The notes beneath the pieces were generated by a model. It ran no database searches. It saw only the letters and a program-made list of their open reading frames with translations, and was not told the DNA's origin. A stretch of 64,000 nt of DNA from Podarcis muralis (taxonomy: Eukaryota): contig NC_135656.1 in the NCBI RefSeq assembly GCF_964188315.1, positions 3,472,001 through 3,536,000 on the forward strand, given 5' to 3'. Below, piece after piece: positions 8,796 through 64,000 of this stretch; the first letter of the stretch is position 1, and each line of letters opens with the position of its first letter. The translations under genes were made by a program, and so were the position numbers.

Positions 8796-9237
8796 CAGCC
8801 AAGTCACAGGGAACCAGGCAGAGGCCTTCTCAGTGGTGGCGCCTTCTTCATGGTGATCCACTACTGCTTTAAGGGAGGTCTTGGAATAAGTAGATTTGTT
8901 GCTGATCCAAAACACCCACCCACCCCACTCACACATGAAAACAAAGACCACCACAGCCAACTACAAAGGAATAACCACACCCTAGGCCAACCCCAACCTC
9001 TCTCACCACCAAAGGAACACAAGCAAACAGCAAAGAACCTGCACAAACAACGCTGACACCAAACCCTACATATAGGAAGTAAAATAGAATAATCGCCTCC
9101 CCACCCCACCCCCACCCATCTCTTTCCCCTTTTCTTCCTAATTTCTTAACAAATGAAAATGATTTGTAAAAGTGTTACATGGGGGGGGGGGACATATGAG
9201 AGAGAGACATTGCACACTTTTGTAAATCAACAAAATC

Positions 9238-9267
9238 TTTAATAAATAAATAAATAAATAAATAAAT
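9238..9267 (-). terminator. Candidate ATTAAA poly(A) signal preceded by an (ATTT)n tract, present in all six full copies
   Basis: Plus-strand tttaat at 9238-9243 followed by (aaat)n, ~140-165 nt downstream of the stop codon. Confidence 0.5.
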
Positions 9268-9291
9268 ACTAGTCCTAAAAAAGAGGCCTCC

Positions 9292-9485
9292 TCACCTGAA
9301 GGACCTCAAAGCCCACCTGAAGTCCCAAAACAAAACTATCAGATCCTGATCCATGGAGATCCATGCGTGTATGGAGCGATCTGTGTGGATCTGCATCTGA
9401 TAGTTTAGTCTTTACGGTTGAAGGGAATCACATGTATAATCGTATGTTTGGGGACATCAGGTGGGCTTTGATGTCCTTCAGGTGA
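9292..9485. repeat. Inverted repeat spanning the claudin stop codon (copy 1)
   Basis: 9292-9332 pairs with 9445-9485 (38/41) and 9333-9353 with 9386-9406 (19/21), 38-nt bulge, 32-nt loop. Same structure at 15169, 19401, 26013, 30107, 37284, 44053, 50175 and 62790. Confidence 0.9.
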
Positions 9486-10511
9486 CCTTTGGGGTGTATG
9501 GCTTTCCTCCATCTCCACTGTGCAGGATTCCTCTGGAATGACAAGATCACTTGCACAGCTTTCCTCCATCTCCACTGCGCAGGATTCCTCTGGAATGACA
9601 AGATCACTTGCACAGCTTTCCTCCATCTCCACTGCGCAGGATTCCTCTGGAATGACAAGATCTTCCGCATGGGTCTTCTCCATCTCCACTGCGGAGGATT
9701 TCTCTTGAATTACCACGTCCAGCAGAGAACCACACTTCGAACAAGTAGTAAGACTCTCGCTTTTCACCCCACTTCCTGGGGTAATCACCACCACAGTTTC
9801 TATTTGAGATGTATCTGTTGCGGTGGTCCTGATGCAACATCTCTCCATCCCAACCAATGCTGCACTCAGCAGCTGGAAACCCGCAGCGATATAGCCTAGA
9901 TAAATAGAAGGTCCAATATGCTGCTCGCTGGGAATTTGAGGCAATTCAAAAGCTTCTGGGAAGACAATTTCCCCATTTTGTAAGACAGCAGACATGTTCC
10001 ATATCACAGAAATCAGGACGAGTATCCCTGCAGGTAAGTTCAGCAGAGCTCCAAGGCTAAAAAAGGTTAACACAAAATCCTTATGTTTTCTGGGCTTGAA
10101 CACGTTGTACAAAGCAAATGAAATTAATCCGAGGGCCGCTGAATTCATGATGGAAGCTAATGCCATTAAATCTTGGGCAATAAAAATTTCCCTTGGGAGG
10201 GTTGGATGTTGCTCATTGAGGTCTTCGCAATGCCAAAAAGCGTTGCCGTCGTTAGAAGGGTCTTTCCAAAAACAGACCTGCCAGATTCCAATCCAGATGT
10301 TCCCAGAGCCGATTCCCTTGATGTTTTCCACACGCCACACTCTCCAGTTGGCAATGGCTATTGAGGCAATGCACATCATCCAGGCCAAAATATCCATCAG
10401 GAATGCACACAACTGGAGACTGGAAACTACACTCAGCCATTTGACCACCAGGTCTTTCACCCGCAGGGGGGGTTTGGAGAGGCGGGGAGCAGGGGAGACC
10501 TTGGCAGACAT
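9405..10511 (-). CDS. CLDN34: Claudin-34-like protein, copy 1 (~368 aa)
   Basis: Four hydrophobic helices and a claudin ECL1 signature WRVW..GIWQVC..C plus LPREIFIAQDL typical of CLDN34. The ORF call extends to 10559, but the extra 16 codons look like an intron polypyrimidine tract. Symbol means family-level likeness. Confidence 0.85.
   Translation of the reverse strand: MSAKVSPAPRLSKPPLRVKDLVVKWLSVVSSLQLCAFLMDILAWMMCIASIAIANWRVWRVENIKGIGSGNIWIGIWQVCFWKDPSNDGNAFWHCEDLNEQHPTLPREIFIAQDLMALASIMNSAALGLISFALYNVFKPRKHKDFVLTFFSLGALLNLPAGILVLISVIWNMSAVLQNGEIVFPEAFELPQIPSEQHIGPSIYLGYIAAGFQLLSAALVGMERCCIRTTATDTSQIETVVVITPGSGVKSESLTTCSKCGSLLDVVIQEKSSAVEMEKTHAEDLVIPEESCAVEMEESCASDLVIPEESCAVEMEESCASDLVIPEESCTVEMEESHTPQRSPEGHQSPPDVPKHTIIHVIPFNRKD
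9503..9710 (-). repeat. 57-bp coding VNTR (19-aa unit EESCAVEMEESCASDLVIP)
   Basis: Three near-perfect units plus one diverged unit in the C-tail; copy 4 has two fewer (114 bp shorter). Confidence 0.93.
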
Positions 10512-13382: not shown

Positions 13383-15281
13383 TCATTTAAAGGAGCCTCA
13401 TCCCTTTTCCCACCCAACTTCCTCCTGCACACAGCTTCAAAATTTCCATGAAGAACTAACTAAATAACCAACCCATAATTGGAATTTATGAGATTAAGGA
13501 GATAAATTATTTTTATATAATGAAAATAGATGGGAGGATAAGTTAATTGCGCAAGGCGAGAATATATAGGATGGCAAAAAATTAAAACAAAGATTATGAT
13601 TTGGTTTCTTAAAATAACACCAACACATGCCTCCTCAGTGGATTTCAGAACAAATCTCTCTCTCTTTTTTTAAATTACGCAAACACTGTAATGCAAGGAG
13701 TTGTAGTAGTGACAATGCAGTGAGATTCTACTCAGAGAAAGCCTATTGGAATGAATGGGTTTGAATTAGTTGTGTCCTTTAGTTTTTGCTTTTAATCTGG
13801 ATAATACCTAATTAGGGGTAGGGATTGCTTTGCTTTCTTTCTGTTCTTGTTTTTATTAAGTATTTTGTTGGGTTGTTTTTGTCGTTGTTGAAATTCCACA
13901 AATTGCACATCAGGATTCGTTACATAGTAAGTCCCCCCCCCCCTTTTCTATTATCTGCTTCCCATCCCACTTCCTAGGATGTTTTTTTCTTTTCCACCCT
14001 TAGCTGCAACTTATCTTCCCTCTTTTATATCAGAACTCTAATGCTCTATTTGAATTAAAAGAGGGGGAAACCCAGCCGGATGGGCGGGGTCTAACTAAAC
14101 TATTATTGTTGTCTTATTTATTTATTTGTGTTTTTATCTTGTATAAAAAATAAAACCCCCCAAAACCCAAAGTTGAAGCAAGAAGGCATCTTCAAATGTT
14201 AAATAAACACAAGCAGTGAATTGCCAGGACTTGGTTGCCCCTGGTGATGAATTCACTCTTTCCACCCACCCACCCCCCTTTCAAAAATGTGCATGGAATG
14301 AAAGAGCTGGCATTCAATTCTATTCTTTTAAAAGCATATTTTCTATTATCATTGGGTCCATTCGGACAAATATTGGGTCCCTTCTCTCACTTTTGACCCT
14401 TCTTGATTCCCTCATTTCTGGGGGTTGGACTAGATGACCCATGGGGTCCCTTCCAACTCTTCCGTTCTACGATTCTCTCGCCTACAATTCCGACACCCAC
14501 TTCATGTTGTACCAATCATATCAGCAGATAAACCACATTTTCTTCAGTTGATGGTATTTTTTTAGGGGGTAGAAAGGAGTGTGGCTTTGTTTGGGAGGTT
14601 TTTGTTAGGAAATCCTGACATCCAGTGGATGGGGAACGCATGACAGCTGACGTTACACGCCCAACATCCACTTAAAAGCCATATGGTGCCTTGAAACGCT
14701 TCCCCCAAAAGGATTCTGGGAGCTGTAGTGCTGTAGTCCCAGCACTACCATTCCCAGAGTTCTCTGGGAAGTTGTGGGCATCTCTTTTGAGAGGCAATGG
14801 AGTGCGCCTCCGGGGGTGAAATCAAAGCTTTTCAGCAGCCGCTAGAAGGAAAAACAAAGGAGACGCCTGCGAGAAGCCAAGTCACAGGGAACCAGGCAGA
14901 GGCCTTCTCGGTGGTGGCGCCTTCTTCATGGTGATCCACTACTGCTTTAAGGGAGGTCTTGGAATAAGTAGATTTGTTGCTGATCCAAAACACCCGCCCA
15001 CCCCACTCACACATGAAAACAAAGACCACCACAGCCAACTACAAAGGAATAACCACACCCTAGGCCAACCCCAACCTCTCTCACCACCAAAGGAACACAA
15101 GCAAACACAAGCAAACAAAATCTTAAATAAATAAATAAATAAATACTAGTCCTAAAAAAGAGGCCTCCTCACCTGAAGGACCTCAAAGCCCACCTGAAGT
15201 CCCAAAACCAAACTATCAGATCCTGATCCATGGAGATCCATGCGTGTATGGAGCGATCTGCGTGGATCTGGATCTGCTAGT

Positions 15282-15380
15282 TTAGTCTTTATGGTTGAAG
15301 GGAATCACATGTATAATCGTATGTTTGGGGACATCAGGTGGGCTTTGATGTCCTTCAGGTGACCTTTGGGGTGTATGGCT
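15282..15380 (-). pseudogene. Claudin 3'-end stub 1 (last 32 codons, ending FNHKD*)
   Basis: Matches the claudin 3' end and stops abruptly at a TG-starting LTR. Confidence 0.9.
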
Positions 15381-15757
15381 GTGGCATTTGCCTCTTAGGA
15401 TGGGTCATAAGGAAAGGGTTAAAATGGGTGTGATGTGATTGGCCAGTGAGAATGCAAGGGGGGAGTAAAAGTTAGAGTGGGAGGTTTTGAAAGTCAGTTG
15501 AGGTTTGGGAGTTGGAGAAGGAAGAGGGAGAAATAGGCCGTGGGTTGGTCAAGTTGTATTGTGAGAGAGTGAGAGGAATTGTTAGGTGGAGTCAGATAGA
15601 TACCGGTAGTTGGAATAATCAGTTTGGAGTTGTTAGGAACTAAGATGAAGCAACTGACAAGAGAAAAATAAACTGAAACCATACGCTTGTTCCTGCATTT
15701 AATAATAAACTTGATCATTTGTTAATGTTAACAACTGTCTGGACTCTGTGTGTCACA
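15380..15757 (+). mobile_element. Solo LTR, 378 bp, no TSD
   Basis: TGTGGCA...TGTCACA ends, ATTGG box, AATAAA ~45 nt from the 3' end. Flanks atggc and gtggt do not match. Confidence 0.7.
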
Positions 15758-16345
15758 GTGGTGGCCACATGTGGTGGGAGTGTGAAAAGATAAAAAAAAA
15801 TTTGGGACTTAATATATAATGAATTGAAGAAGCTTTTTAAGTATACATTGCCGAAAAAACTGGGGGCTTTTTTATTAGGGATAATAGGGGAGGAAGTAAA
15901 AAAGGAGGATCATAAATTATTCCAATATGCTACAGCAGCAGCTAGGATCCTTGTAGCTCAAAAGTGGAAGTCACAGGAGACCCCAACGGTTATGGAATGG
16001 CAGGCTAAATTTTTTGAATACACAGAATTAGCTAAAAAGACGTATAAAATCTGGGACCAAAAAGGGACAAAGTTTGAAGAAGAATGGGGTAAATTTGTGG
16101 CATACATAAGAATTAACTGTAGAAGTTTAAAAACTACAGCAGGGTAAACATAAATCCTGTGATGTGTATAGAAGTTAATAAGAATCTGTAAGAGAAGATA
16201 TATATTAAGAAAACCGCAGCTGGGAAGGAAGGAAGTCTGGGCGTGAATATACACAGTGTAAATAAGATGACATAAAATGATGACTGTAAAAGATTGTTTT
16301 ATTTCGTTTGTGAAAAAACTCAATAAAAAGTATTTGCAAAAAAAG
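15758..16345 (+). mobile_element. L1-clade LINE 3' fragment
   Basis: GHMWWECEKIK..FLLGII..YATAAARILVAQKWK, with an AATAAA and A-rich tail near 16322-16360. Confidence 0.85.
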
Positions 16346-17139
16346 AAAAAGAAAGAAAGCAATCACAATGGTGGCACAGGGTCAATAGACTGTCAAATGT
16401 CCGGGGGCCCTGTGTGATCGCCACGAAATTGGTGGTAGCGGTGGGAAAACAACCGTACCTGCGGTGCAATAACATCACTACCTGTCACCACAGAAGTGGT
16501 AGGCAAGTGGTGGGATTTGGTGGGGAAAACAATACACCTGGAGGGGGGAGGGTAAATCTGTGAAGGGATTACCTAGCCCGGGGGTGTAGTTGCGTGGCGA
16601 GTTCCCGCCCCCCACCAGGATAAATAAAGACACGAGACACCATAGTTTAAGGTTAAATGGGCGAATTAGGCCACAACTTTATTGAATTCAGGAATGAGAG
16701 GCATTGGCTTAGGCATTGGTCCTAACGACTATCCGGCTCCAGCCCATTTGCTGGAGACACAGGGAAGGGTTAACTCTAAATCGGGGGAGTCTCCCGCCAA
16801 GGCACGTCGACTAGGAGCTCCCCCGGGTCACCGCTCTGGGGCGTGCCTTTGGCCCTCACCTCCATAGGCTTCGGACAGGGCCACACCCCCCGGAGACCTT
16901 TAACGGACCACCCTTCGCTCACTGGGGGGAGGTGATGGCGTTCCTCCCCCCCCACATCCTCTTAACCCCTTCTTACCAATGCCTACCGCCACACGAGCAA
17001 TCGCTCACCGCCAATACTCTCATGCCTGAAACCAATCTCTTACCCCCTTTGCTATATCAGTAAGCCACATGTCATTTCCCACATCTGAAAGATGCACGCC
17101 ATCAAGCCGGTAGAGGGCCTCCCACCCACCCAGGGCTGC

Positions 17140-17520
17140 CACTCTACGCACCACCGCCCGATCCAAGGCTTTCCTAGCCCTATTTGTGGCTATCGGGCAC
17201 CTGCTCTCTCTCCAAACCCGGCTTTCCATCAACAAGGCCCCAAGAATGGTGATGTTTGGATAAGAGGCCTTACGCACCACCGCCCGATCCAAGGCTTTCC
17301 TAGCCCTATTTGTGGCTATCGGGCACCTGCTCTCTCTCCAAACCCGGCTTTCCATCAACAAGGCCCCAAGAATGGTGATGTTTGGATAAGAGGCCTTAGG
17401 CACCACCGCCCGATCCAAGGCTTTCCTAGCCCTATTTGTGGCTATCGGGCACCTGCTCTCTCCCCAAACCTGGCTTTCCATCACCAAGGCCCCAAGAATG
17501 GTGATGTTTGGATAAGAGGC
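17140..17520. repeat. 126-bp tandem repeat x3 inside the SGNH ORF (x2 in the second copy)
   Basis: 42-aa unit repeated; ORF is 179 aa here versus 137 aa at 27864..28277. Confidence 0.9.
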
Positions 17521-18586
17521 CTTAAGTTCCTCAAAGTCACTAAAGATATGCCACATCAAGTCGACTGCCTTTCTGTAAACTGAATCCTTTTCGCCTAATT
17601 GGATAACCCAAGCATCTGGGGGGGCCCACCGCTGCCGCTCTGGCCCTAATTGCAGGCAACATTCCGGCCCAGTGCATTTCCCTCCGAGAGATCCATGATA
17701 TATTGATGTAGTTTAAGGTGCGGCCCGAGACCGGAATTGATGGCGCAGACCCTGGCCCAATGCACAATGCTGTGCCCGATTATCCAGATGCGCGCCCTCA
17801 TAGCTCCTGCACCATAGGGTCCCTGTTAACGGCATGGTTTCTAACCCGGTGGACAGTGCAGGGACAGTGCAGGGCCTATAATCCAAATGTGCACCACAAC
17901 GTCACCTGAAAGCAAAAGAAGGTAACGAAGCCAGGTCAAGTATACTGTGAACAATCACAAGGTCTTACGAATATATCCCTTAAATGCATCAGACTTCCAC
18001 TGCCCCCAAGTCCTTCATCCTTTCAGCTAAGAGTCGCAAATGCAGTGCTGTGGTGGCGGCCCCAATCCTAAAGGAGTTAGCCACGAATTCAGCTGAGGAT
18101 AAACCGCAGGCAGCAATCACCCTTTGCATAATGCACGTGGACTGATGCCATGCAAGGCGGGAGCCAACCAAATGTATAAGAAATGGACCTGAGACGGTTG
18201 GTCTCACGTACATGAAATGTTTAGTGTCCTTTACTGCTGATCGTTTTTGGAACATTGGACATGCAGGACTAAATTGGATCTGAACAAGGTCAGGTCTCTC
18301 AAACTAACCCCAGGCAGCGGATTCTGGTTGGCCCTTACAAACCACTTCGCCAATGCGCATAGCGCCAAATGCAATGGAGTATGCAGCTGAAAATAACCGG
18401 GCCTTGTCCTCGGACCAACAGATACTCCATATTTTATTTTATTATTATAATTTTAATTTTATTTAATTATTTATTTATTTTGGAATTGGCATAGAATGTC
18501 ATAAGGGCCTTCTACCATCACTTTTAGGAGGCTGCAGCCTGCGCCAGCCCTACAACAACAACAACAACAATAATAATAGGAATAAT

Positions 18587-18674
18587 AAAAAAATTCCTTC
18601 CAGTAGCACCCCAAAGACCAACTAAGTTAGTTCTTGGTATGAGCTTTCGTGTGCATGCACACTTCTTCAGATAC
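18587..18674. mobile_element. Penelope-like element terminal fragment inside the Ngaro copy
   Basis: aaattccttccagtagcacc..gagctttcgtgtgcatgcacacttcttcagata resembles reptile Penelope ends. Also ~29305-29392. Confidence 0.55.
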
Positions 18675-19513
18675 TAATAATTTATTATTTGTGCCCCGCC
18701 CATCTGGCTGTGTTTCCCCAGCCACTCTGGGCGGCTTACAACAAAACACGACCCAGCACCCTCCAATGTACCAAGTATTGCAGAGCTTCAGCCTTGGTAG
18801 GAGGTGTGTCAAGCCTAGGATTTACTAATTTGCCTTGAGGTGTGTCAAGCCTAGCATTTATTCATTTATTCATTTATTATTTATTTATTTATTTATAAAT
18901 TTGCCTTGGAACTCCATAAGATCTAAGCGTGGACGGGGCTCCTGAAGCTAATACTCCCTTCAGGACATCACATTCCCAAGGCTCCAAAGGTGCACCCGGA
19001 ATGGCTGTGGCAATTTGCTGCGCCTGAGCATCTGTGATGTCATTGTTAACCCTAGGGGTAAATTTGGTAGAGAAATAGATGTTTAATTCTAAGCACAAAA
19101 GGACAAAGGTCCGGGACAGATCTGCCACTCTAGGAGAGTGCGATAATCGCTTTGACAGGACACTGACAACCGTTTGATTGTCGGTCCAGAAGCATACCTG
19201 GTGATTCCTGAACTCGTCAGCACGCAAATGCCATTGTACTTTTCCAGGAACTTCAACCCAACCTTCAGGTCTGACTTTACCACTTTAGAGAGGCGCACTC
19301 AGTGTTGGGGACATGAGAGAGAGACATTGCACACTTTTGTAAATCAACAAAATCTTTAATAAATAAATAAATAAATACTAGTCCTAAAAAAGAGGCCTCC
19401 TCACCTGAAGGACCTCAAAGCCCACCTGAAGTCCCAAAACAAAACTATCAGATCCTGATCCATGGAGATCCATGCGTGTATGGAGCGATCTGTGTGGATC
19501 TGGATCTGATAGT

Positions 19514-20620
19514 TTAGTCTTTACGGTTGAAGGGAATCACATGTATAATCGTATGTTTGGGGACATCAGGTGGGCTTTGATGTCCTTCAGGTGAGCTTTG
19601 GGGTGTATGGCTTTCCTCCATCTCCACTGCGCAGGATTCCTCTGGAATGACAAGATCACTTGCATAGCTTTCCTCCATCTCCACTGCGCAGGATTCCTCT
19701 GGAATGACAAGATCACTTGCACAGCTTTCCTCCATCTCCACTGCGCAGGATTCCTCTGGAATGACAAGATCTTCCGCATGGGTCTTCTCCATCTCCACTG
19801 CAGAGGATTTCTCTTGAATTACCAGGTCCAGCAGAGAACCACACTTCGAACAAGTAGTAAGACTCTCGCTTTTCACCCCACTTCCTGGGGTAATCACCAC
19901 CACAGTTTCTATTTGAGATGTATCTGTTGCGGTGGTCCTGATGCAACATCTCTCCATCCCAACCAATGCTGCACTCAGCAGCTGGAAACCCGCAGCGATA
20001 TAGCCTAGATAAATAGAAGGTCCAATATGCTGCTCGCTGGGAATTTGAGGCAATTCAAAAGCTTCTGGGAAGACAATTTCCCCATTTTGTAAGACAGCAG
20101 ACATGTTCCATATCACAGAAATCAGGACGAGTATCCCTGCAGGTAAGTTCAGCAGAGCTCCAAGGCTAAAAAAGGTTAACACAAAATCCTTATGTTTTCT
20201 GGGCTTGAACACGTTGTACAAAGCAAATGAAATTAATCCGAGGGCCGCTGAATTCATGATGGAAGCTAATGCCATTAAATCTTGGGCAATAAAAATTTCC
20301 CTTGGGAGGGTTGGATGTTGCTCATTGAGGTCTTCGCAATGCCAAAAAGCGTTGCCGTCGTTAGAAGGGTCTTTCCAAAAACAGACCTGCCAGATTCCAA
20401 TCCAGATGTTCCCAGAGCCGATTCCCTTGATGTTTTCCACACGCCACACTCTCCAGTTGGCAATGGCTATTGAGGCAATGCACATCATCCAGGCCAAAAT
20501 ATCCATCAGGAATGCACACAACTGGAGACTGGAAACTACACTCAGCCATTTGACCACCAGGTCTTTCACCCGCAGGGGGGGTTTGGAGAGGCGGGGAGCA
20601 GGGGAGACCTTGGCAGACAT
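19514..20620 (-). CDS. CLDN34: Claudin-34-like protein, copy 2
   Basis: Intact ORF nearly identical to copy 1; ends FNRKD. Confidence 0.85.
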   Translation of the reverse strand: MSAKVSPAPRLSKPPLRVKDLVVKWLSVVSSLQLCAFLMDILAWMMCIASIAIANWRVWRVENIKGIGSGNIWIGIWQVCFWKDPSNDGNAFWHCEDLNEQHPTLPREIFIAQDLMALASIMNSAALGLISFALYNVFKPRKHKDFVLTFFSLGALLNLPAGILVLISVIWNMSAVLQNGEIVFPEAFELPQIPSEQHIGPSIYLGYIAAGFQLLSAALVGMERCCIRTTATDTSQIETVVVITPGSGVKSESLTTCSKCGSLLDLVIQEKSSAVEMEKTHAEDLVIPEESCAVEMEESCASDLVIPEESCAVEMEESYASDLVIPEESCAVEMEESHTPQSSPEGHQSPPDVPKHTIIHVIPFNRKD

Positions 20621-23502: not shown

Positions 23503-24599
23503 ATTTAAAGGAGCCTCATCCCTTTTCCCACCCAACTTCCTCCTGCACACAGCTTCAAAATTTCAATGAAGAACTAACTAAATAACCAACCCATAATTGG
23601 AATTTATGAGATTAAGGAGATAAATTATTTTTATATAATGAAAATAGATGGGAGGATAAGTTAATTGCGCAAGGCGAGAATATATAGGATGGCAAAAAAT
23701 TAAAACAAAGATTATGATTTGGTTTCTTAAAATAACACCAACACATGCCTCCTCAGTGGATTTCAGAACAAATGTCTCTCTCTTTTTTTAAATTACGCAA
23801 ACACTGTAATGCAAGGAGTTGTAGTGACAATGCAGTGAGATTCTACTCAGAGAAAGCCTATCGGAATGAATGGGTTTGAATTAGTTGTGTCCTTTAGTTT
23901 TTGCTTTTAATCTGGATAATACCTAATTAGGGGTAGGGATTGCTTTGCTTTCTTTCTGTTCTTGTTTTTATTAAGTATTTTGTTGGGTTGTTTTTGTCGT
24001 TGTTGAAATTCCACAAATTGCACATCAGGATTCGTTACATAGTAAGTCCCCCCCCCCCCCCTTTTCTATTATCTGCTTCCCATCCCACTTCCTAGGATGT
24101 TTCTTTCTTTTCCACCCTTAGCTGCAACTTATCTTCCCTCTTTTATATCAGAACTCTAATGCTCTATTAGAATTAAAAGAGGGGGAAACCCAGCCGGATG
24201 GGCGGGGTCTAACTAAACTATTATTGTTGTCTTATTTATTTATTTGTGTTTTTATCTTGTATAAAAAATAAAACCCCCCAAAACCCAAAGTTGAAGCAAG
24301 AAGGCATCTTCAAATGTTAAATAAACGCAAGCAGTGAATTGTCAGGACTTGGAAGCCCCCCTGGTGATGAATTCACTCTTTCCACCCACCCACCCCCCTT
24401 TCAAAAATGTGCATGGAATGAAAGAGCTGGCATTCAATTCTATTCTTTTAAAAGCATATTTTCTATTATCATTGGGTCCATTCGGACAAATATTGGGTCC
24501 TTTCTCTCACTTTTGACCCTTCTTGATTCCCTCATTTCTGGGGGTTGGACTAGATGACCCATGGGGTCCCTTCCAACTCTTCCGTTCTACGATTCTCTC

Positions 24600-25244
24600 A
24601 TAGAATCATAGAGTTGGAAGAGACCACAGGGGCCATCGAGTCCAACCCCCTGCCAAGCAGGAAACACCATCAGAGCACTCCTGACATATGGTTGTCAAGC
24701 CTCTGCTTAAAGACCTCCAAAGAAGGAGACTCCACCACACTCCTTGGCAGCAAATTCCACTGTCGAACAGCTCTTACTGTCAGGAAGTTCTTCCTAATGT
24801 TTAGGTGGAATCTTCTTTCTTGTAGTTTGGATCCATTGCTCCGTGTCCGCTTCTCTGGAGCAGCAGAAAACAGCCTTTCTCCCTCCTCTATGTGACATCC
24901 TTTTATATATTTGTACATGGCTATCATATCACCCCGTAACCTCCTCTTCTCCAGGCTAAACATGCCCAGCTCCCTTAGCCGTTCCTCATAAGGCATCGTT
25001 TCCAGGCCTTTGACCATTTTGGTTGCCCTCCTCTGGACACGTTCGAGTTTGTCAGTGTCCTTCTTGAACTGTGGTGCCCAGAACTGGACACAGTACTCCA
25101 GGTGAGGTCTGACCAGAGCAGAATACAGTGGCACTATTACTTCCCTTGATCTAGATGCTATACTCCTATTGATGAGGCCCAGAATTGCATTGGCTTTTTT
25201 AGCTGCCGCGTCACATTGTTGGCTCATGTCAAGTTTGTGGTCAA
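24600..25244 (-). mobile_element. Young 5'-truncated CR1 LINE, unit 2 only
   Basis: Stop-free 185-aa RT C-terminus ([22 protein letters not shown]), (ATTCTATG)-type tail, TSD ctctc at 24595-24599 and 25245-25249. Empty site in the other units. Confidence 0.93.
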
Positions 25245-25986: not shown

Positions 25987-26125
25987 ATACTAGTCCTAAA
26001 AAAGAGGCCTCCTCACCTGAAGGACCTCAAAGCCCACCTGAAGTACCAAAACAAAACTATCAGATCCTGATCCATGGAGATCCATGCGTGTATGGAGCGA
26101 TCTGCGTGGATCTGGATCTGATAGT

Positions 26126-26224
26126 TTAGTCTTTACGGTTGAAGGGAATCACATGTATAATCGTATGTTTGGGAACATCAGGTGGGCTTTGATGTCCTTC
26201 AGGTGACCTTTGGGGTGTATGGCT
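26126..26224 (-). pseudogene. Claudin 3'-end stub 2
   Basis: Same breakpoint as stub 1. Confidence 0.9.
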
Positions 26225-26601
26225 GTGGCATTTGCCTCTTAGGATGGGTCATAAGGAAAGGGTTAAAATGGGTGTGATGTGATTGGCCAGTGAGAATGCA
26301 AGGGGGGAGTAAAAGTTAGAGTGGGAGGTTTTGAAAGTCAGTTGAGGTTTGGGAGTTGGAGAAGGAAGAGGGAGAAATAGGCCGTGGGTTGGTCAAGTTG
26401 TATTGTGAGAGAGTGAGAGGAATTGTTAGGTGGAGTCAGATAGATACCGGTAGTTGGAATAATCAGTTTGGAGTTGTTAGGAACTAAGATGAAGCAACTG
26501 ACAAGAGAAAAATAAACTGAAACCATACGCTTGTTCCTGCATTTAATAATAAACTTGATCATTTGTTAATGTTAACAACTGTCTGGACTCTGTGTGTCAC
26601 A
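26224..26601 (+). mobile_element. Solo LTR, second copy
   Basis: Paralogous to 15380-15757. Confidence 0.7.
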
Positions 26602-30023: not shown

Positions 30024-30219
30024 TACATGAGAGAGAGACATTGCACACTTTTGTAAATCAACAAAATCTTTAATAAATAAATACTAGTCCTAAAAAAGAG
30101 GCCTCCTCACCTGAAGGACCTCAAAGCCCACCTGAAGTCCCAAAACAAAACTATCAGATCCTGATCCATGGAGATCCATGCGTGTATGGAGCGATCTGCG
30201 TGGATCTGCATCTGATAGT

Positions 30220-31326
30220 TTAGTCTTTACAGTTGAAGGGAATCACATGTATAATCGTATGTTTGGGGACATCAGGTGGGCTTTGATGTCCTTCAGGTGA
30301 CCTTTGGGGTGTATGGCTTTCCTCCCTCTCCACTGTGCAGGATTCCTCTGGAATGACAAGATCACTTGCACAGCTTTCCTCCATCTCCACTGCGCAGGAT
30401 TCCTCTGGAATGACAAGATCACTTGCACAGCTTTCCTCCATCTCAACTGCGCAGGATTCCTCTGGAATGACAAGATCTTCCGCATGGGTCTTCTCCATCT
30501 CCACTGCGGAGGATTTCTCTTGAATTACCAGGTCCAGCAGAGAACCACACTTCGAACAAGTAGTAAGACTCTCGCTTTTCACCCCACTTCCTGGGGTAAT
30601 CACCACCACCGTTTCTATTTGAGATGTATCTGTTGCGGTGGTCCTGATGCAACATCTCTCCATCCCAACCAATGCTGCACTCAGCAGCTGGAAACCCGCA
30701 GCGATATAGCCTAGATAAATAGAAGGTCCAATATGCTGCTCGCTGGGAATTTGAGGCAATTCAAAAGCTTCTGGGAAGACAATTTCCCCATTTTGTAAGA
30801 CAGCAGACATGTTCCATATCACAGAAATCAGGACGAGTATCCCTGCAGGTAAGTTCAGCAGAGCTCCAAGGCTAAAAAAGGTTAACACAAAATCCTTATG
30901 TTTTCTGGGCTTGAACACATTGTACAAAGCAAATGAAATTAATCCGAGGGCCGCTGAATTCATGATGGAAGCTAATGCCATTAAATCTTGGGCAATAAAA
31001 ATTTCCCTTGGGAGGGTTGGATGTTGCTCATTGAGGTCTTCGCAATGCCAAAAAGCGTTGCCGTCGTTAGAAGGGTCTTTCCAAAAACAGACCTGCCAGA
31101 TTCCAACCCAGATGTTCCCAGAGCCGATTCCCTTGATGTTTTCCACACGCCACACTCTCCAGTTGGCAATGGCTATTGGGGCAATGCACATCATCCAGGC
31201 CAAAATATCCGTCAGGAATGCACACAACTGGAGACCGGAAACTACACTCAGCCATTTGACCACCAGGTCTTTCACCCGCAGGGGGGGTTTGGAGAGGCGG
31301 GGAGCAGGGGAGACCTTGGCAGACAT
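30220..31326 (-). CDS. CLDN34: Claudin-34-like protein, copy 3
   Basis: Intact ORF with private M>T, S>P and I>V changes in TM1/ECL1; ends FNCKD. Confidence 0.85.
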   Translation of the reverse strand: MSAKVSPAPRLSKPPLRVKDLVVKWLSVVSGLQLCAFLTDILAWMMCIAPIAIANWRVWRVENIKGIGSGNIWVGIWQVCFWKDPSNDGNAFWHCEDLNEQHPTLPREIFIAQDLMALASIMNSAALGLISFALYNVFKPRKHKDFVLTFFSLGALLNLPAGILVLISVIWNMSAVLQNGEIVFPEAFELPQIPSEQHIGPSIYLGYIAAGFQLLSAALVGMERCCIRTTATDTSQIETVVVITPGSGVKSESLTTCSKCGSLLDLVIQEKSSAVEMEKTHAEDLVIPEESCAVEMEESCASDLVIPEESCAVEMEESCASDLVIPEESCTVEREESHTPQRSPEGHQSPPDVPKHTIIHVIPFNCKD

Positions 31327-37118: not shown

Positions 37119-37396
37119 ATTTTCTTCCTAATGTCTCAACAAATGAAAATGATTTGTAAAAGTGTTACATGGGGGGGGGGGGGACATGAGAGAAAGAGAC
37201 ATTGCACACTTTTGTAAATCAACAAAATCTTTAATAAATAAATAAATAAATAAATAAATACTAGTCCTAAAAAAGAGGCCTCCTCACCTGAAGGACCTCA
37301 AAGCCCACCTGAAGTCCCAAAACAAAACTATCAGATCCTGATCCATGGAGATCCATGCGTGTATGGAGCGATCTGCGTGGATCTGCATCTGATAGT

Positions 37397-38389
37397 TTAG
37401 TCTTTACAGTTGAAGGGAATCACATGTATAATCGTATGTTTGGGGACATCAGGTGGGCTTTGATGTCCTTCAGGTGACCTTTGGGGTGTATGGCTTTCCT
37501 CCATCTCCACTGTGCAGGATTCCTCTGGAATGACAAGATCTTCCGCATGAGTCTTCTCCATCTCCACTGCGGAGGATTTCTCTTGAATTACCAGGTCCAG
37601 CAGAGAACCACACTTCGAACAAGTAGTAAGACTCTCGCTTTTCACCCCACTTCCTGGGGTAATCACCACCACCGTTTCTATTTGAGATGTATCTGTTGCG
37701 GTGGTCCTGATGCAACATCTCTCCATCCCAACCAATGCTGCACTCAGCAGCTGGAAACCCGCAGCGATATAGCCTAGATAAATAGAAGGTCCAATATGCT
37801 GCTCGCTGGGAATTTGAGGCAATTCAAAAGCTTCTGGGAAGACAATTTCCCCATTTTGTAAGACAGCAGACATGTTCCATATCACAGAAATCAGGACGAG
37901 TATCCCTGCAGGTAAGTTCAGCAGAGCTCCAAGGCTAAAAAAGGTTAACACAAAATCCTTATGTTTTCTGGGCTTGAACACGTTGTACAAAGCAAATGAA
38001 ATTAATCCGAGGGCCGCTGAATTCATGATGGAAGCTAATGCCATTAAATCTTGGGCAATAAAAATTTCCCTTGGGAGGGTTGGATGTTGCTCATTGAGGT
38101 CTTCGCAATGCCAAAAAGCGTTGCCGTCGTTAGAAGGGTCTTTCCAAAAACAGACCTGCCAGATTCCAATCCAGATGTTCCCAGAGCCGACTCCCTTGAT
38201 GTTTTCCACACGCCACACTCTCCAGTTGGCAATGTCTATTGAGGCAATGCACATCATCCAGGCCAAAATATCCATCAGGAATGCACACAACTGGAGACCG
38301 GAAACTACACTCAGCCATTTGACCACCAGGTCTTTCACCCGCAGGGGGGGTTTGGAGAGGCGGGGAGCAGGGGAGACCTTGGCAGACAT
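37397..38389 (-). CDS. CLDN34: Claudin-34-like protein, copy 4 (~330 aa, two tail repeats fewer)
   Basis: Intact ORF with an in-frame 114-bp loss in the VNTR. Confidence 0.85.
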   Translation of the reverse strand: MSAKVSPAPRLSKPPLRVKDLVVKWLSVVSGLQLCAFLMDILAWMMCIASIDIANWRVWRVENIKGVGSGNIWIGIWQVCFWKDPSNDGNAFWHCEDLNEQHPTLPREIFIAQDLMALASIMNSAALGLISFALYNVFKPRKHKDFVLTFFSLGALLNLPAGILVLISVIWNMSAVLQNGEIVFPEAFELPQIPSEQHIGPSIYLGYIAAGFQLLSAALVGMERCCIRTTATDTSQIETVVVITPGSGVKSESLTTCSKCGSLLDLVIQEKSSAVEMEKTHAEDLVIPEESCTVEMEESHTPQRSPEGHQSPPDVPKHTIIHVIPFNCKD

Positions 38390-43833: not shown

Positions 43834-44165
43834 TAAAATAGAAAAATCGCCACCCCACCCCACCCCCACCCATCTCTTTCCCCTTTTCTTCCTAATGTCT
43901 CAACAAATGAAAATGATTTGTAAAAGTGTTACATGGGGGGGGGGGGGGACATGAGAGAAAGAGACATTGCACACTTTTGTAAATCAACAAAATCTTTAAT
44001 TAATAAATAAATAAATAAATAAATAAATACTAGTCCTAAAAAAGAGGCCTCCTCACCTGAAGGACCTCAAAGCCCACCTGAAGTCCCAAAACAAAACTAT
44101 CAGATCCTGATCCATGGAGATCCATGCGTGTATGGAGCGATCTGCGTGGATCTGCATCTGATAGT

Positions 44166-45272
44166 TTAGTCTTTACAGTTGAAGGGAATCACATGTATAA
44201 TCGTATGTTTGGGGACATCAGGTGGGCTTTGATGTCCTTCAGGTGACCTTTGGGGTGTATGGCTTTCCTCCCTCTCCACTGTGCAGGATTCCTCTGGAAT
44301 GACAAGATCACTTGCACAGCTTTCCTCCATCTCCACTGCGCAGGATTCCTCTGGAATGACAAGATCACTTGCACAGCTTTCCTCCATCTCAACTGCGCAG
44401 GATTCCTCTGGAATGACAAGATCTTCCGCATGAGTCTTCTCCATCTCCACTGCGGAGGATTTCTCTTGAATTACCAGGTCCAGCAGAGAACCACACTTCG
44501 AACAAGTAGTAAGACTCTCGCTTTTCACCCCACTTCCTGGGGTAATCACCACCACCGTTTCTATTTGAGATGTATCTGTTGCGGTGGTCCTGATGCAACA
44601 TCTCTCCATCCCAACCAATGCTGCACTCAGCAGCTGGAAACCCGCAGCGATATAGCCTAGATAAATAGAAGGTCCAATATGCTGCTCGCTGGGAATTTGA
44701 GGCAATTCAAAAGCTTCTGGGAAGACAATTTCCCCATTTTGTAAGACAGCAGACATGTTCCATATCACAGAAATCAGGACGAGTATCCCTGCAGGTAAGT
44801 TCAGCAGAGCTCCAAGGCTAAAAAAGGTTAACACAAAATCCTTATGTTTTCTGGGCTTGAACACATTGTACAAAGCAAATGAAATTAATCCGAGGGCCGC
44901 TGAATTCATGATGGAAGCTAATGCCATTAAATCTTGGGCAATAAAAATTTCCCTTGGGAGGGTTGGATGTTGCTCATTGAGGTCTTCGCAATGCCAAAAA
45001 GCGTTGCCGTCGTTAGAAGGGTCTTTCCAAAAACAGACCTGCCAGATTCCAATCCAGATGTTCCCAGAGCCGATTCCCTTGATGTTTTCCACACGCCACA
45101 CTCTCCAGTTGGCAATGGCTATTGAGGCAATGCACATCATCCAGGCCAAAATATCCATCAGGAATGCACACAACTGGAGACTGGAAACTACACTCAGCCA
45201 TTTGACCACCAGGTCTTTCACCCGCAGGGGGGGTTTGGAGAGGCGGGGAGCAGGGGAGACCTTGGCAGACAT
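44166..45272 (-). CDS. CLDN34: Claudin-34-like protein, copy 5
   Basis: Intact ORF. Confidence 0.85.
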   Translation of the reverse strand: MSAKVSPAPRLSKPPLRVKDLVVKWLSVVSSLQLCAFLMDILAWMMCIASIAIANWRVWRVENIKGIGSGNIWIGIWQVCFWKDPSNDGNAFWHCEDLNEQHPTLPREIFIAQDLMALASIMNSAALGLISFALYNVFKPRKHKDFVLTFFSLGALLNLPAGILVLISVIWNMSAVLQNGEIVFPEAFELPQIPSEQHIGPSIYLGYIAAGFQLLSAALVGMERCCIRTTATDTSQIETVVVITPGSGVKSESLTTCSKCGSLLDLVIQEKSSAVEMEKTHAEDLVIPEESCAVEMEESCASDLVIPEESCAVEMEESCASDLVIPEESCTVEREESHTPQRSPEGHQSPPDVPKHTIIHVIPFNCKD

Positions 45273-48225: not shown

Positions 48226-50287
48226 CCCTTTTCCCACCCAACTTCCTCCTGCACACAGCTTCAAAATTTCCATGAAGAACTAACTAAATAACCAACCAAC
48301 CCATAATTGGAATTTATGAGATTAAGGAGATAAATTATTTTTATATAATGAAAATAGATGGGAGGATAAGTTAATTGCGCAAGGCGAGAATATATAGGAT
48401 GGCAAAAAATTAAAACAAATATTATGATTTGGTTTCTTAAAATAACACCAACACATGCCTCCTCAGTGGATTTCAGAACAAATGTCTGTCTCTTTTTTTA
48501 AATTACGCAAACACTGTAATGCAAGGAGTTGTAGTAGTGACAATGCAGTGAGATTCTACTCAGAGAAAGCCTATTGGAATGAATGGGTTTGAATTAGTTG
48601 TGTCCTTTAGTTTTTGCTTTTAATCTGGATAATACCTAATTAGGGGTAGGGATTGCTTTGCTTTGCTTTCTTTCTGTTCTTGTTTTTATTAAGTATTTTG
48701 TTGGGTTGTTTTTGTCGTTGTTGAAATTCCACAAATTGCACATCAGGATTCGTTACATAGTAAGTCCCCCCCCCTTTCTATTATCTGCTTCCCATCCCAC
48801 TTCCTAGGATGTTTTCTTCTTTTCCACCCTTAGCTGCAACGTATCTTCCCTCTTTTATATCAGAACTCTAATGCTCTATTAGAATTAAAAGAGGGGGGAA
48901 CCAAGCCAGATGGGCGGGGTCTAACTAAACTATTATTGTTGTCTTTTTATTTATTTGTGTTTTTATCTTGTATAAAAAATAAAAACCCCCAAAACCCAAA
49001 GTTGAAGCAAGAAGGCATCTTCAAATGTTAAATAAACGCAAGCAGTGAATTGCCAGGACTTGGTTGCCCCTGGTGATGAATTCACTCTTTCCACCCACCC
49101 ACCCCCCTTTCAAAAATGTGCATGGAATGAAAGAGCTGGCATTCAATTCTATTCTTTTAAAAGCATATTTTCTGTTATCATTGGGTCCATTCGGACAAAT
49201 ATTGGGTCCTTTCTCTCACTTTTGACCCTTCTTGATTCCCTCATTTCTGGGGGTTGGACTAGATGACCCATGGGGTCCCTTCCAACTCTTCCCGTTCTAC
49301 GATTCTCTCGCCTACAATTCCGACACCCACTTCATGTTGTACCAATCATACCAGCAGATAAACCACATTTTCTTCAGTTGATGGTATTTTTTTAGGGGGT
49401 AGAAAGGAGTGTGGCTTTGTTTGGGAGGTTTTTGTTAGGAAATCCTGACATCCAGTGGATGTCATATGGTGCCTTGAAACGCTTCCCCCAAAAGGATTCT
49501 GGGAGCTGTAGTGCTGAGAGCCGTTTGGAGACCCCCCCCTATTCCCCTCCCAGAACTACCATTCCCAGAGTTCCCTGGGAAGTTGTGGGCATCTCTTTTG
49601 AGAGGCAATGGAGTGCGCCTCCGGGGGTGAAATCAAAGCTTTTCAGCAGCCGCTAGAAGGAAAAACGAAGGAGACGCCTGCGAGAAGCCAAGTCACAGGG
49701 AACCAGGCAGAGGCCTTCTCGGTGGTGGCGCCTTCTTCATGGTGATCCACTACTGCTTTAAGGGAGGTCTTGGAATAAGTAGATTTGTTGCTGATCCAAA
49801 ACACCCACCCACCCACCCCACTCACACATGAAAACAAAGACCACCACAGCCAACTACAAAGGAATAACCACACCCTAGGCCAACCCCAACCTCTCTCACC
49901 ACCAAAGGAACACAAGCAAACAGCAAAGAACCTGCACAAACAACGCTGACACCAAACCCTACATATAGGAAGTAAAATAGAAAAATCGCCACCCCACCCC
50001 ACCCCCACCCACCTCTTTCCCCCTTTCTTCCTAATTTCTTAACAAATGAAAATGATTTGTAAAAGTGTTACATGGGGGGGGGGGGCATGATAGAGAGACA
50101 TTGCACACTTTTGTAAATCAACAAAATCTTTAATAAATAAATAAATAAATACTAGTCCTAAAAAAGAGGCCTCCTCACCTGAAGGACCTCAAAGCCCAAC
50201 TGAAGTCCCAAAACAAAACTATCAGATCCTGATCCATGGAGATCCATGCGTGTATGGAGCGATCTGCGTGGATCTGCATCTGATAGT

Positions 50288-51394
50288 TTAGTCTTTACAG
50301 TTGAAGGGAATCACATGTATAATCGTATGTTTGGGGACATCAGGTGGGCTTTGATGTCCTTCAGGTGACCTTTGGGGTGTATGGCTTTCCTCCATCTCCA
50401 CTGCGCAGGATTCCTCTGGAATGACAAGATCACTTGCACAGCTTTCCTCCATCTCCACTGCGCAGGATTCCTCTGGAATGACAAGATCACTTGCACAGCT
50501 TTCCTCCATCTCAACTGCGCAGGATTCCTCTGGAATGACAAGATCTTCCGCATGGGTCTTCTCCATCTCCACTGCGGAGGATTTCTCTTGAATTACCAGG
50601 TCCAGCAGAGAACCACACTTCGAACAAGTAGTAAGACTCTCGCTTTTCACCCCACTTCCTGGGGTAATCACCACCACAGTTTCTATTTGAGATGTATCTG
50701 TTGCGGTGGTCCTGATGCAACATCTCTCCATCCCAACCAATGCGGCACTCAGCAGCTGGAAACCCGCAGCGATATAGCCTAGATAAATAGAAGGTCCAAT
50801 ATGCTGCTCGCTGGGAATTTGAGGCAATTCAAAAGCTTCTGGGAAGACAATTTCCCCATTTTGTAAGACAGCAGACATGTTCCATATCACAGAAATCAGG
50901 ACGAGTATCCCTGCAGGTAAGTTCAGCAGAGCTCCAAGGCTAAAAAAGGTTAACACAAAATCCTTATGTTTTCTGGGCTTGAACACGTTGTACAAAGCAA
51001 ATGAAATTAATCCGAGGGCCGCTGAATTCATGATGGAAGCTAATGCCATTAAATCTTGGGCAATAAAAATTTCCCTTGGGAGGGTTGGATGTTGCTCATT
51101 GAGGTCTTCGCAATGCCAAAAAGCGTTGCCGTCGTTAGAAGGGTCTTTCCAAAAACAGACCTGCCAGATTCCAATCCAGATGTTCCCAGAGCCGACTCCC
51201 TTGATGTTTTCCACACGCCACACTCTCCAGTTGGCAATGTCTATTGAGGCAATGCACATCATCCAGGCCAAAATATCCATCAGGAATGCACACAACTGGA
51301 GACCGGAAACTACACTCAGCCATTTGACCACCAGGTCTTTCACCCGCAGGGGGGGTTTGGAGAGGCGGGGAGCAGGGGAGACCTTGGCAGACAT
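50288..51394 (-). CDS. CLDN34: Claudin-34-like protein, copy 6
   Basis: Intact ORF; shares A>D and I>V with copy 4. Confidence 0.85.
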   Translation of the reverse strand: MSAKVSPAPRLSKPPLRVKDLVVKWLSVVSGLQLCAFLMDILAWMMCIASIDIANWRVWRVENIKGVGSGNIWIGIWQVCFWKDPSNDGNAFWHCEDLNEQHPTLPREIFIAQDLMALASIMNSAALGLISFALYNVFKPRKHKDFVLTFFSLGALLNLPAGILVLISVIWNMSAVLQNGEIVFPEAFELPQIPSEQHIGPSIYLGYIAAGFQLLSAALVGMERCCIRTTATDTSQIETVVVITPGSGVKSESLTTCSKCGSLLDLVIQEKSSAVEMEKTHAEDLVIPEESCAVEMEESCASDLVIPEESCAVEMEESCASDLVIPEESCAVEMEESHTPQRSPEGHQSPPDVPKHTIIHVIPFNCKD

Positions 51395-62763: not shown

Positions 62764-62902
62764 ATACTAGTCCTAAAAAAGAGGCCTCCTCACCTGAAGG
62801 ACCTCAAAGCCCACCTGAAGTCCCAAAACAAAACTATCAGATCCTGATCCATGGAGATCCATGCGTGTATGGAGTGATCTGCGTGGATCTGGATCTGATA
62901 GT

Positions 62903-63001
62903 TTAGTCTTTACGGTTGAAGGGAATCACATGTATAATCGTATGTTTGGGGACATCAGGTGGGCTTTGATGTCCTTCAGGTGACCTTTGGGGTGTATGGC
63001 T
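62903..63001 (-). pseudogene. Claudin 3'-end stub 3
   Basis: Same breakpoint as stubs 1 and 2. Confidence 0.9.
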
Positions 63002-63980: not shown

Positions 63981-64000
63981 CAATCACAATGGTGGCACAG

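What the first reader, a model, noticed from the sequence alone, without database searches (positions are those of the whole stretch)
9292..9485. Each claudin gene carries an antisense copy of its own last codons in the 3' UTR, forming a long fold-back across the stop codon
Seen: a contiguous 62-nt 3'-UTR arm (9292-9353) is the reverse complement of 41 nt of CDS (codons SPEGHQSPPDVPKH, 38/41) plus the 21 nt starting at the stop codon (19/21). The last ~12 codons sit in a 38-nt bulge, and the inner ~74-nt hairpin has pre-miRNA size. It is present in all six genes and three stubs. Established: inverted duplication of target-gene sequence is how plant MIRNA genes and Drosophila hpRNAs arise, and long dsRNA is an ADAR/Dicer/Staufen substrate. 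Inference: this may be a self-targeting small-RNA or RNA-structure dosage control built into an amplified gene. It could equally be a neutral or fragile DNA palindrome.
Basis: partly seen in the sequence, partly recalled or inferred. Interest (0 to 1): 0.85.

Follow-up and report, generated by a model that had tools for sequence, protein, structure and literature searches.

The report
Fold-back across lizard claudin stop codon
Every copy of an amplified wall-lizard claudin-34-like gene carries, just after its stop codon, a backwards copy of its own last codons; this is a real, transcribed hairpin, but it looks like an inherited and slowly decaying leftover of one old inverted duplication, with no sign so far that it is kept for a function.

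Summary
Nine copies of a ~194-nt imperfect palindrome lie at the 3' ends of six claudin-34-like genes (minus strand) and three truncated stubs. Outer arms are 41 nt (38/41 paired) and inner arms 29-35 nt. About 37 nt, the last 12 codons, are looped out. The predicted RNA fold is -103.5 kcal/mol (z = -10.9).

The nine copies are about 98% identical, so they count as one data point. The same fold-back is present in diverged paralogues of Podarcis muralis, P. raffonei and P. lilfordi.

Outgroups show that the coding arm and the first ~30 nt of the 3'UTR are ancestral. The UTR arm is therefore the copy. Its reverse complement equals the inferred ancestral coding arm at 41/41. A rearranged P. raffonei copy still carries the inverted version of the last codons, so the original event was one contiguous inverted duplication that was later trimmed by deletions.

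Assembled contigs from RNA-type runs span both arms at a depth like that of the coding sequence.

Across 13 sequences and 70 pairs there is no compensatory change. All variation breaks pairs or gives wobble pairs. One paralogue clade lost the base of the inner hairpin. The outer arms change about half as often as the typical stretch of the gene region, which is suggestive only.

Small RNAs and RNA editing could not be tested. Verdict: an inherited inverted-duplication relic; function unproven.

The parts
9405..10511 (-). Claudin-34-like gene copy 1: single-exon CDS of 368 aa counted from the first ATG, stop TAA at 9407-9405
   Evidence: ORF found. Pfam Claudin_2 E = 1.3e-11. Closest named relatives are claudin-34-like proteins of Podarcis.
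9445..9485 (-). Outer arm A, the coding arm (codons SPEGHQSPPDVPKH)
   Evidence: Ancestral coding sequence is present in Zootoca L006 and Rhineura L004.
9408..9444 (-). Unpaired segment B: the last 12 codons (TIIHVIPFNRKD), looped out of the fold-back
   Evidence: Its inverted counterpart B' still exists in P. raffonei L010.
9378..9412 (-). Inner arm C: the last codons, the stop codon and the first ~27 nt of the 3'UTR
   Evidence: The UTR part is homologous to the Rhineura 3'UTR.
9362..9377 (-). 16-nt apical loop, the remnant of a spacer that is 96 nt long in L010
9327..9361 (-). Inner arm C', the inverted copy of C
   Evidence: 80% complementary. Its base is replaced in L005/L008/L009.
9292..9332 (-). 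Outer arm A', the inverted copy of the coding arm, lying in the 3'UTR
   Evidence: Its reverse complement equals the ancestral state of arm A as seen in Zootoca L006 and in P. raffonei/P. lilfordi L001/L002.
9237..9270 (-). (AUUU)n run that ends in an ATTAAA poly(A) signal (plus-strand 9237-9242)
   Evidence: Read from the sequence. The X1 transcript contig ends at 9217, about 20 nt past the signal.
15169..15362 (-). Fold-back copy 2 (stub 1)
19401..19594 (-). Fold-back copy 3 (gene 2)
26013..26206 (-). Fold-back copy 4 (stub 2)
30107..30300 (-). Fold-back copy 5 (gene 3)
37284..37477 (-). Fold-back copy 6 (gene 4)
44053..44246 (-). Fold-back copy 7 (gene 5)
50175..50368 (-). Fold-back copy 8 (gene 6)
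62790..62983 (-). Fold-back copy 9 (stub 3)

Best explanation
The fold-back is the trimmed remnant of one inverted duplication in an ancestor of the Podarcis claudin-34-like family. A template switch during replication is the simplest mechanism. About 110 nt were copied backwards into the 3'UTR roughly 100 nt downstream: the last ~26 codons, the stop codon and ~30 nt of UTR. This gave A-B-C-spacer-C'-B'-A'. In the lineage that founded the tandem arrays, deletions removed B' and most of the spacer, leaving the present 41+35-nt two-step hairpin with the last 12 codons looped out. Every later gene copy inherited it. It is transcribed as part of the mRNA and would fold very stably in isolation. 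Its sequence evolution, however, is erosion and not maintenance. Shown here: the structure, its inheritance, the polarity (the CDS arm is the source), the contiguous origin, transcription of both arms, and the absence of compensatory change. Inferred: the template-switch mechanism and the lack of function.
For: 1) The source is ancestral. The tail SPEGHQSPP(D/E)VPKHTII is conserved as protein in three Podarcis species and partly in Rhineura. Zootoca L006 has arm A and the stop codon. Rhineura L004 has the coding tail and a homologue of C plus the spacer, but no inverted copy.
2) The reverse complement of A' equals the ancestral A, with GAAGTCCCAAAACA as in Zootoca and L001/L002. P. lilfordi L002 still pairs at all 41 positions (40 Watson-Crick plus one G-U).
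3) P. raffonei L010 keeps a 96-nt spacer homologous to the Rhineura 3'UTR, followed by an inverted C'+B' that matches the gene tail at 54/57. The copy was therefore once contiguous.
4) All array paralogues share identical junctions: window, L005, L007, L008, L009, L001 and L002.
5) There are no compensatory changes in 70 pairs. Eighteen pairs vary only by becoming unpaired and five only by wobble. Outer-stem non-Watson-Crick positions run from 1 to 7 per lineage, about what ~5% neutral change per lineage would give on 82 nt (inference).
6) The inner stem base is lost in L005/L008/L009.
7) Template switching is documented to create whole hairpins in a single event (PMC8794818, PMC10710096).
Against: Both outer arms have about half the substitution density of the typical stretch: 5 changes per 41 columns each, against a median of 10. 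Only 14% of 41-column windows in the gene plus flanks are as low. A' is the least changed of eight non-coding windows. The structure has survived in dozens of copies in three species without any copy examined losing an outer arm, apart from the rearranged L010. Transcripts carry both arms at the same depth as the CDS, so the cell does see the hairpin. Absence of function is inferred, not shown: no small-RNA data were available, and there was no usable depth to test editing.
Confidence: 0.65

Rival explanations
1. The fold-back is a cis-acting double-stranded RNA element under weak selection. A long stem spanning the stop codon would tune mRNA stability, nuclear export or translation termination, for example through Staufen-type binding or ADAR editing, and so damp the output of an amplified family.
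For: Both arms are transcribed at CDS-like depth. The fold is very stable in all lineages, from -98 to -127 kcal/mol. The outer arms change about half as often as the typical stretch. An AUUUA-rich run lies directly 3' of it.
Against: No compensatory change was found. Two pair-breaking changes in the coding arm were fixed early and never repaired. Low divergence of arm A can be explained by protein coding, and that of A' is only at the 14th percentile. Transcript contigs show no differences in the hairpin other than known paralogue variants. Ribosomes must open arm A on every pass (inference).
Confidence: 0.18
2. The fold-back is a precursor of small RNAs, either hpRNA/endo-siRNA-like or miRNA-like from the inner hairpin. 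Their antisense strand, from A', would target the coding tail of all family members in trans, giving copy-number-dependent self-limitation.
For: The inverted repeat is derived from the target gene itself, as in Drosophila hpRNA loci that silence amplified families (PMC10317233, PMC10292708). The inner hairpin has a ~29-35-bp stem and a 16-nt loop, close to the preferred pri-miRNA geometry described in PMC10710096.
Against: No Rfam family matches; the best hit is 20.8 bits against a gathering score of 100. The basal part of the inner stem is destroyed in one clade that persists in two species. There is no covariation. No small-RNA run was available. From general knowledge, vertebrate somatic Dicer processes long dsRNA poorly.
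Confidence: 0.07
3. What matters is the DNA palindrome. A hairpin- or cruciform-prone site at the gene's 3' end would promote breaks, template switches and rearrangements, and so helped drive amplification, inversions and truncations in this family.
For: Single-stranded DNA folds at -62.7 kcal/mol, z = -10.8. Several independent indels hit the palindrome: loss of B', shrinkage of the spacer, loss of A' in L010, replacement of the C' base in L005/L008/L009, and a ~330-nt deletion starting at the stop codon in Zootoca L006. The stubs break 17 nt from the arm. L010 carries further inversions.
Against: The three stubs share one breakpoint, so they reflect one event. Unit junctions in the array are not at the palindrome itself. 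The indel rate was not compared with that of control sequence. Arms of 41 and 35 nt are short for strong fragility in vertebrates (general knowledge).
Confidence: 0.08
4. The fold-back is a miniature transposable element with terminal inverted repeats that inserted at the gene's end and supplied the last codons.
For: Only the palindromic shape and the multiple copies.
Against: One arm is ancestral coding sequence and the adjoining part is ancestral 3'UTR in outgroups that lack the second arm. No target-site duplication is visible at the arm ends. Every copy found lies in this one gene context.
Confidence: 0.01

Closest known systems
Hairpins created by template-switch mutations during DNA replication (PMC8794818; PMC10710096)
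   Same: An inverted copy of nearby sequence appears in one step. It is perfect or near-perfect at birth, lies in a transcribed region, and is absent in outgroups that keep the source sequence.
   Different: At ~110 nt the copy is long for this class. The source includes the gene's own last codons and stop codon. The product was then propagated through a large gene amplification. The mechanism is inferred and was not reconstructed with the four-point model.
Drosophila hpRNA loci that silence amplified gene families (PMC10317233; PMC10292708)
   Same: An inverted repeat made from the sequence of a recently amplified gene family, so the antisense arm is complementary to the family's mRNAs.
   Different: Those are separate loci with long arms and documented Dicer-2-dependent siRNAs that act in trans. 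Here the repeat sits inside each target mRNA, the arms are 41 and 35 nt, the host is a vertebrate, and no small RNAs have been shown.
Inverted-repeat Alu pairs and intramolecular Staufen-binding stems in mammalian 3'UTRs (general knowledge)
   Same: An intramolecular duplex of tens of base pairs in a mature mRNA's 3' region, a potential substrate for ADAR or Staufen.
   Different: One arm here is coding and is opened by translating ribosomes. The repeat derives from the gene itself and not from transposons. No editing or binding data exist.
Arm-to-arm palindromes of amplified gene families on sex chromosomes (general knowledge)
   Same: An amplified, rapidly rearranging gene family with inverted arrangements. 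An earlier scan note reports a palindromic amplicon of the same family.
   Different: Those palindromes are kilobases to megabases long and are kept alike by gene conversion. Here the arms are 41 nt and show no arm-to-arm homogenisation.

Membership tests
Template-switch / local inverted-duplication hairpin | One arm is the reverse complement of adjacent pre-existing sequence and was near-perfect at origin | tested here: met
   The reverse complement of A' equals the inferred ancestral A at 41/41. L002 still pairs at all 41 positions, one of them a G-U wobble.
Template-switch / local inverted-duplication hairpin | The source sequence is present but the inverted copy is absent in an outgroup | tested here: met
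   Rhineura L004 has the coding tail and homologues of C and the spacer, and no inverted copy. Zootoca L006 is uninformative because a ~330-nt deletion spans the site.
Template-switch / local inverted-duplication hairpin | A single contiguous copying event | tested here: met
   L010 retains inverted B'+C', which matches the tail at 54/57 and has the same downstream flank start GAGGCCTC. The present gap in the copy is therefore a later deletion.
miRNA gene | A hairpin of pre-miRNA size and stability | tested here: met
   The 86-nt inner hairpin folds at -34 kcal/mol, z = -6.5.
miRNA gene | A match to a described family | tested here: not met
   The best Rfam hit is mir-3149 at 20.8 bits against a gathering score of 100, E = 0.98.
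miRNA gene | The stem is conserved, with compensatory changes, among relatives | tested here: not met
   No pair has changes on both sides. The basal 12 bp are lost in L005/L008/L009.
miRNA gene | Discrete ~22-nt reads with fixed 5' ends and 2-nt overhangs | not testable with these tools
   No miRNA-seq run was listed for this sequence.
hpRNA / endo-siRNA locus | A long inverted repeat derived from a target gene | tested here: met
   The arms are short, however: 41 and 35 nt.
hpRNA / endo-siRNA locus | Dicer-dependent 21-nt small RNAs that repress the target | not testable with these tools
ADAR-edited 3'UTR duplex | A transcribed intramolecular duplex | tested here: met
   Contigs of runs X1 and X2 span 9217-9530 and 9277-9551. 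Folds.
ADAR-edited 3'UTR duplex | Clustered A-to-G differences in RNA against DNA | tested here: inconclusive
   Within the hairpin the contigs differ only at 9384, 9394 and 9416, all of which are variants among the window's own copies. Raw reads gave at most 4 reads over the hairpin.
MITE / terminal-inverted-repeat transposon | The arms are foreign to the host gene, with a target-site duplication and copies at unrelated sites | tested here: not met
   Arm A and segment C are ancestral gene sequence. No duplication is seen at the arm ends. The palindrome was found only in this gene context.
Claudin / PMP22 superfamily (host gene) | A four-helix claudin domain | tested here: met
   Pfam Claudin_2 covers residues 57-235, E = 1.3e-11. 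Named relatives are claudin-34-like.

The most novel reading that the evidence does not exclude
Each mRNA of this amplified vertebrate gene family carries its own hpRNA-like module. Dicer or Drosha would cut the fold-back, and the antisense arm would yield small RNAs that cleave or repress the coding tails of all paralogues. Silencing would then rise with copy number, as a built-in brake on a possibly selfish amplification, analogous to the hpRNA suppressors of amplified drivers in Drosophila but encoded in cis.
Probability: 0.06. Interest if true: 0.85.

Novelty: new member of a known kind. Interest (0 to 1): 0.35.

Why it matters
As it stands, this is a clean natural example of how one inverted duplication can give a whole gene family an extremely stable mRNA hairpin across the stop codon. 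An intermediate form (L010) is still preserved, and the decay can be read lineage by lineage. That is useful for work on the birth of hairpins and miRNA-like structures. If the hairpin were processed or edited, it would be a rare vertebrate case of self-targeting RNA control tied to gene amplification. Nothing tested here points that way.

Tried and rejected
- TE/MITE origin: rejected, because outgroups carry one arm as ordinary coding and UTR sequence.
- Known RNA family: an Rfam scan at permissive E-values gave only noise.
- Small-RNA evidence: a run search restricted to miRNA libraries listed nothing.
- Editing: the single read-laying run gave contigs that span the hairpin. There were only ~4 raw reads, from a diverged paralogue, over the UTR arm in X23 and none in X21. 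Editing therefore cannot be judged.
- Dating by Zootoca: the hairpin first looked absent there. Alignment then showed that L006 has a deletion across the whole site and that L003 lacks the tail altogether, so Zootoca does not date the event.
- Arm-to-arm gene conversion as a maintaining force: rejected for the period covered, because lineage-specific changes in A were never copied to A'.
- Stub breakpoints as three independent breaks at the palindrome: rejected. All three share one junction and the same 3.9-kb neighbour, so they are one event.
- Literature: searches for claudin-34 in lizards found nothing.

Full report
**1. What is there**

The window holds a tandem array of claudin-34-like genes on the minus strand. 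Copy 1 is an uninterrupted ORF at 9405-10511 (368 aa from the first ATG). It has a Pfam Claudin_2 domain, E = 1.3e-11. The nearest named proteins are claudin-34-like proteins of Podarcis muralis, P. raffonei and P. lilfordi. More distant ones come from Zootoca vivipara and Rhineura floridana. The window is therefore almost certainly P. muralis.

Two nested inverted repeats lie at the 3' end of copy 1:
- 9292-9332 pairs with 9445-9485: 41 nt, 93% complementary.
- 9327-9361 pairs with 9378-9412: 35 nt, 80% complementary, with a 16-nt loop.

In mRNA sense the order is as follows:
- arm A, 14 codons (SPEGHQSPPDVPKH);
- an unpaired 37-nt segment B, the last 12 codons;
- arm C, which holds the stop codon and ~27 nt of UTR;
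- the loop;
- C';
- A'.

The 221-nt RNA folds at -103.5 kcal/mol, against -55.2 +/- 4.4 for shuffles (z = -10.9). The inner hairpin alone folds at -34 kcal/mol (z = -6.5).

**2. Nine copies are one observation**

The same structure occurs nine times, at six intact genes and three stubs. The repeat units are 97-99% identical, so they are very recent duplicates. The three stubs share one breakpoint, 17 nt beyond arm A, and the same 3.9-kb neighbouring sequence. They therefore reflect one truncation that was later co-amplified.

**3. Independent lineages**

I fetched genomic loci for diverged family members:
- P. muralis L005, L007 and L008. L008 is on another chromosome.
- P. raffonei L001, L009 and L010. 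L010 is on another chromosome.
- P. lilfordi L002.
- Zootoca L003 and L006.
- Rhineura L004.

All the tandem-array-type Podarcis copies carry the fold-back with identical junctions. Fold energies range from -127.4 kcal/mol (L002, z = -16) to -97.7 kcal/mol (L009). The family is large: the cluster look-up lists more than a dozen distinct annotated P. muralis proteins on the same chromosome.

**4. Polarity and origin**

The coding arm is the source.
- The tail is conserved as protein in Podarcis and partly in Rhineura.
- Zootoca L006 has arm A and the last codons, followed by a stop codon.
- Rhineura has the coding tail and, after its stop codon, a clear homologue of segment C and of a further stretch of 3'UTR. 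It has no inverted copy.

The reverse complement of A' carries the states seen in Zootoca and in L001/L002 (GAAGTCCCAAAACA). The coding arm of the window genes has since changed at 9456 and 9450. The inferred ancestral arms were therefore 41/41 complementary. P. lilfordi L002 still pairs at all 41 positions, one of them a G-U wobble.

P. raffonei L010 is the key intermediate.
- Its forward tail is followed by a 96-nt spacer homologous to the Rhineura 3'UTR.
- Then comes an inverted segment whose reverse complement matches the gene tail B+C at 54/57.
- Then comes the same flank start (GAGGCCTC) that follows A' elsewhere.

The original event was thus one contiguous inverted copy, A-B-C-spacer-C'-B'-A'. 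The array lineage later lost B' and most of the spacer. L010 lost A' and part of B'. Template switching during replication is a documented way to create such hairpins in a single step (PMC8794818, PMC10710096). That this mechanism acted here is inference.

**5. Age**

The hairpin predates two things: the split of the paralogue clades (~11-12% DNA divergence) and the speciation of the three Podarcis species (~2% between orthologous hairpins).

Zootoca cannot date it. L006 is the positional orthologue of L010, since the two share a unique downstream flank. L006 lacks ~330 nt starting right after the stop codon, and that stretch includes ancestral UTR. This is a deletion, not a primitive absence.

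**6. Is it maintained?**

On an alignment of 13 sequences and 70 pairs, no pair has changes on both sides. Eighteen pairs vary only by becoming unpaired and five only through wobble. Non-Watson-Crick positions in the outer stem, counted per sequence or clade:

| Sequence or clade | Non-Watson-Crick positions out of 41 |
|---|---|
| L002 | 1 (a G-U wobble) |
| L001 | 2 |
| Window copies | 3-4 |
| L007 | 3 |
| L005/L008/L009 | 6-7 |

- The two mismatches caused by changes in the coding arm are shared by most paralogues. They are therefore old and were never compensated.
- In L005/L008/L009 the basal ~12 bp of the inner stem were replaced by a small duplication.
- In the same clade a 1-nt deletion puts arm A in another reading frame.

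One observation points the other way. Each outer arm has 5 inferred changes per 41 columns, against a median of 10 for the gene plus its flanks. Only 14% of windows are as low. The segments between the arms are 2-3 times more variable. For A this can be protein constraint. For A' it is suggestive but weak.

**7. Transcription**

Two runs that look like transcriptome assemblies contain contigs spanning 9217-9530 (X1) and 9277-9551 (X2). Their depth is 17 and 10, similar to the CDS contigs at 22 and 17. There is no AATAAA or ATTAAA signal between the stop codon and A'. The first signal is ATTAAA at plus-strand 9237-9242, and the X1 contig ends at 9217. Four raw stranded reads from a diverged paralogue also cover the UTR arm. 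The hairpin is therefore part of the mRNA.

Within the hairpin the contigs differ from copy 1 only at 9384, 9394 and 9416, all of which are variants among the window's own copies. Editing cannot be judged at this depth. No small-RNA library was listed, and no Rfam family matches.

**8. Verdict**

The best-supported explanation is an inherited relic of one inverted duplication that is transcribed but decays without compensation (confidence ~0.65).

| Rival reading | Confidence |
|---|---|
| Weakly constrained cis-acting dsRNA element | ~0.18 |
| DNA-level role of the palindrome in the family's many rearrangements | ~0.08 |
| Small-RNA precursor | ~0.07 |

A transposon origin is excluded. Earlier scan notes on the same chromosome agree with the picture of a fast-rearranging family, but they were not used as evidence. 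Those notes describe a palindromic amplicon of this family, a 57-bp coding VNTR and a 1-bp frame-swapping deletion.

Noticed in passing
window 9243-9270 and the equivalent place in all copies: An (ATTT)n microsatellite lies directly 3' of the hairpin. In the mRNA it reads as 3 to about 14 overlapping AUUUA motifs, like an AU-rich instability element. Its length differs between copies, and it ends in the ATTAAA poly(A) signal. The three stubs have ATTTAA instead.
   Followed up: partly
window 9501-9710 (and the same place in the other gene copies): A 57-nt coding tandem repeat builds the acidic, Cys-containing tail (EESCA.DLVIPEESCAVEM). Copy number differs between paralogues: gene 4 has a 346-aa ORF against 384 aa in the others, and L005 has more units.
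   Followed up: partly
window 9408-9425 versus L007 4979-4996: The last five codons differ at 8 of 18 nt (FNRKD* against YNRES*) between paralogues that are otherwise ~97% alike. This is a mutation cluster that points to a short gene conversion or template switch. The FNRKD version is the one preserved, inverted, in P. raffonei L010, and it resembles Rhineura.
   Followed up: partly
L005 11160-11260, L008, L009: A 1-nt deletion just upstream of arm A shifts the frame, so the arm is translated as ..GYLKDIKGHLMSPNI(Q/R)LYM* and the stop codon falls inside segment B. This clade also has the most decayed hairpin.
   Followed up: partly
L010 15934-18440: This dispersed P. raffonei copy lies inside a calpain gene's span and is heavily rearranged. 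The first ~265 nt of the CDS and the usual 3' flank are both inverted relative to the other copies.
   Followed up: no
window 15381-19306, 26225-30020, 63002-64000: A 3.9-kb sequence follows each stub. It starts TGTGGCATTTGCC and has CCAAT-like and AATAAA motifs, so it looks like an LTR. It contains a 126-nt tandem triplication at 17145-17524. No second LTR was found in the window.
   Followed up: partly
window 58208-60005 (+): A retroelement pol fragment with RNase H and integrase domains (Pfam E = 4e-26 and 5e-16) lies between gene 6 and stub 3.
   Followed up: partly
window 8900-9080: A stretch downstream of the gene has RNA depth in the hundreds, many variants and loose ends in all four runs. 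This is the behaviour of an expressed dispersed repeat and not of this gene's UTR.
   Followed up: no
window 24524-24666: A separate near-palindrome with 69-nt arms, 75% complementary and a 5-nt spacer lies at the edge of a repeat unit.
   Followed up: no
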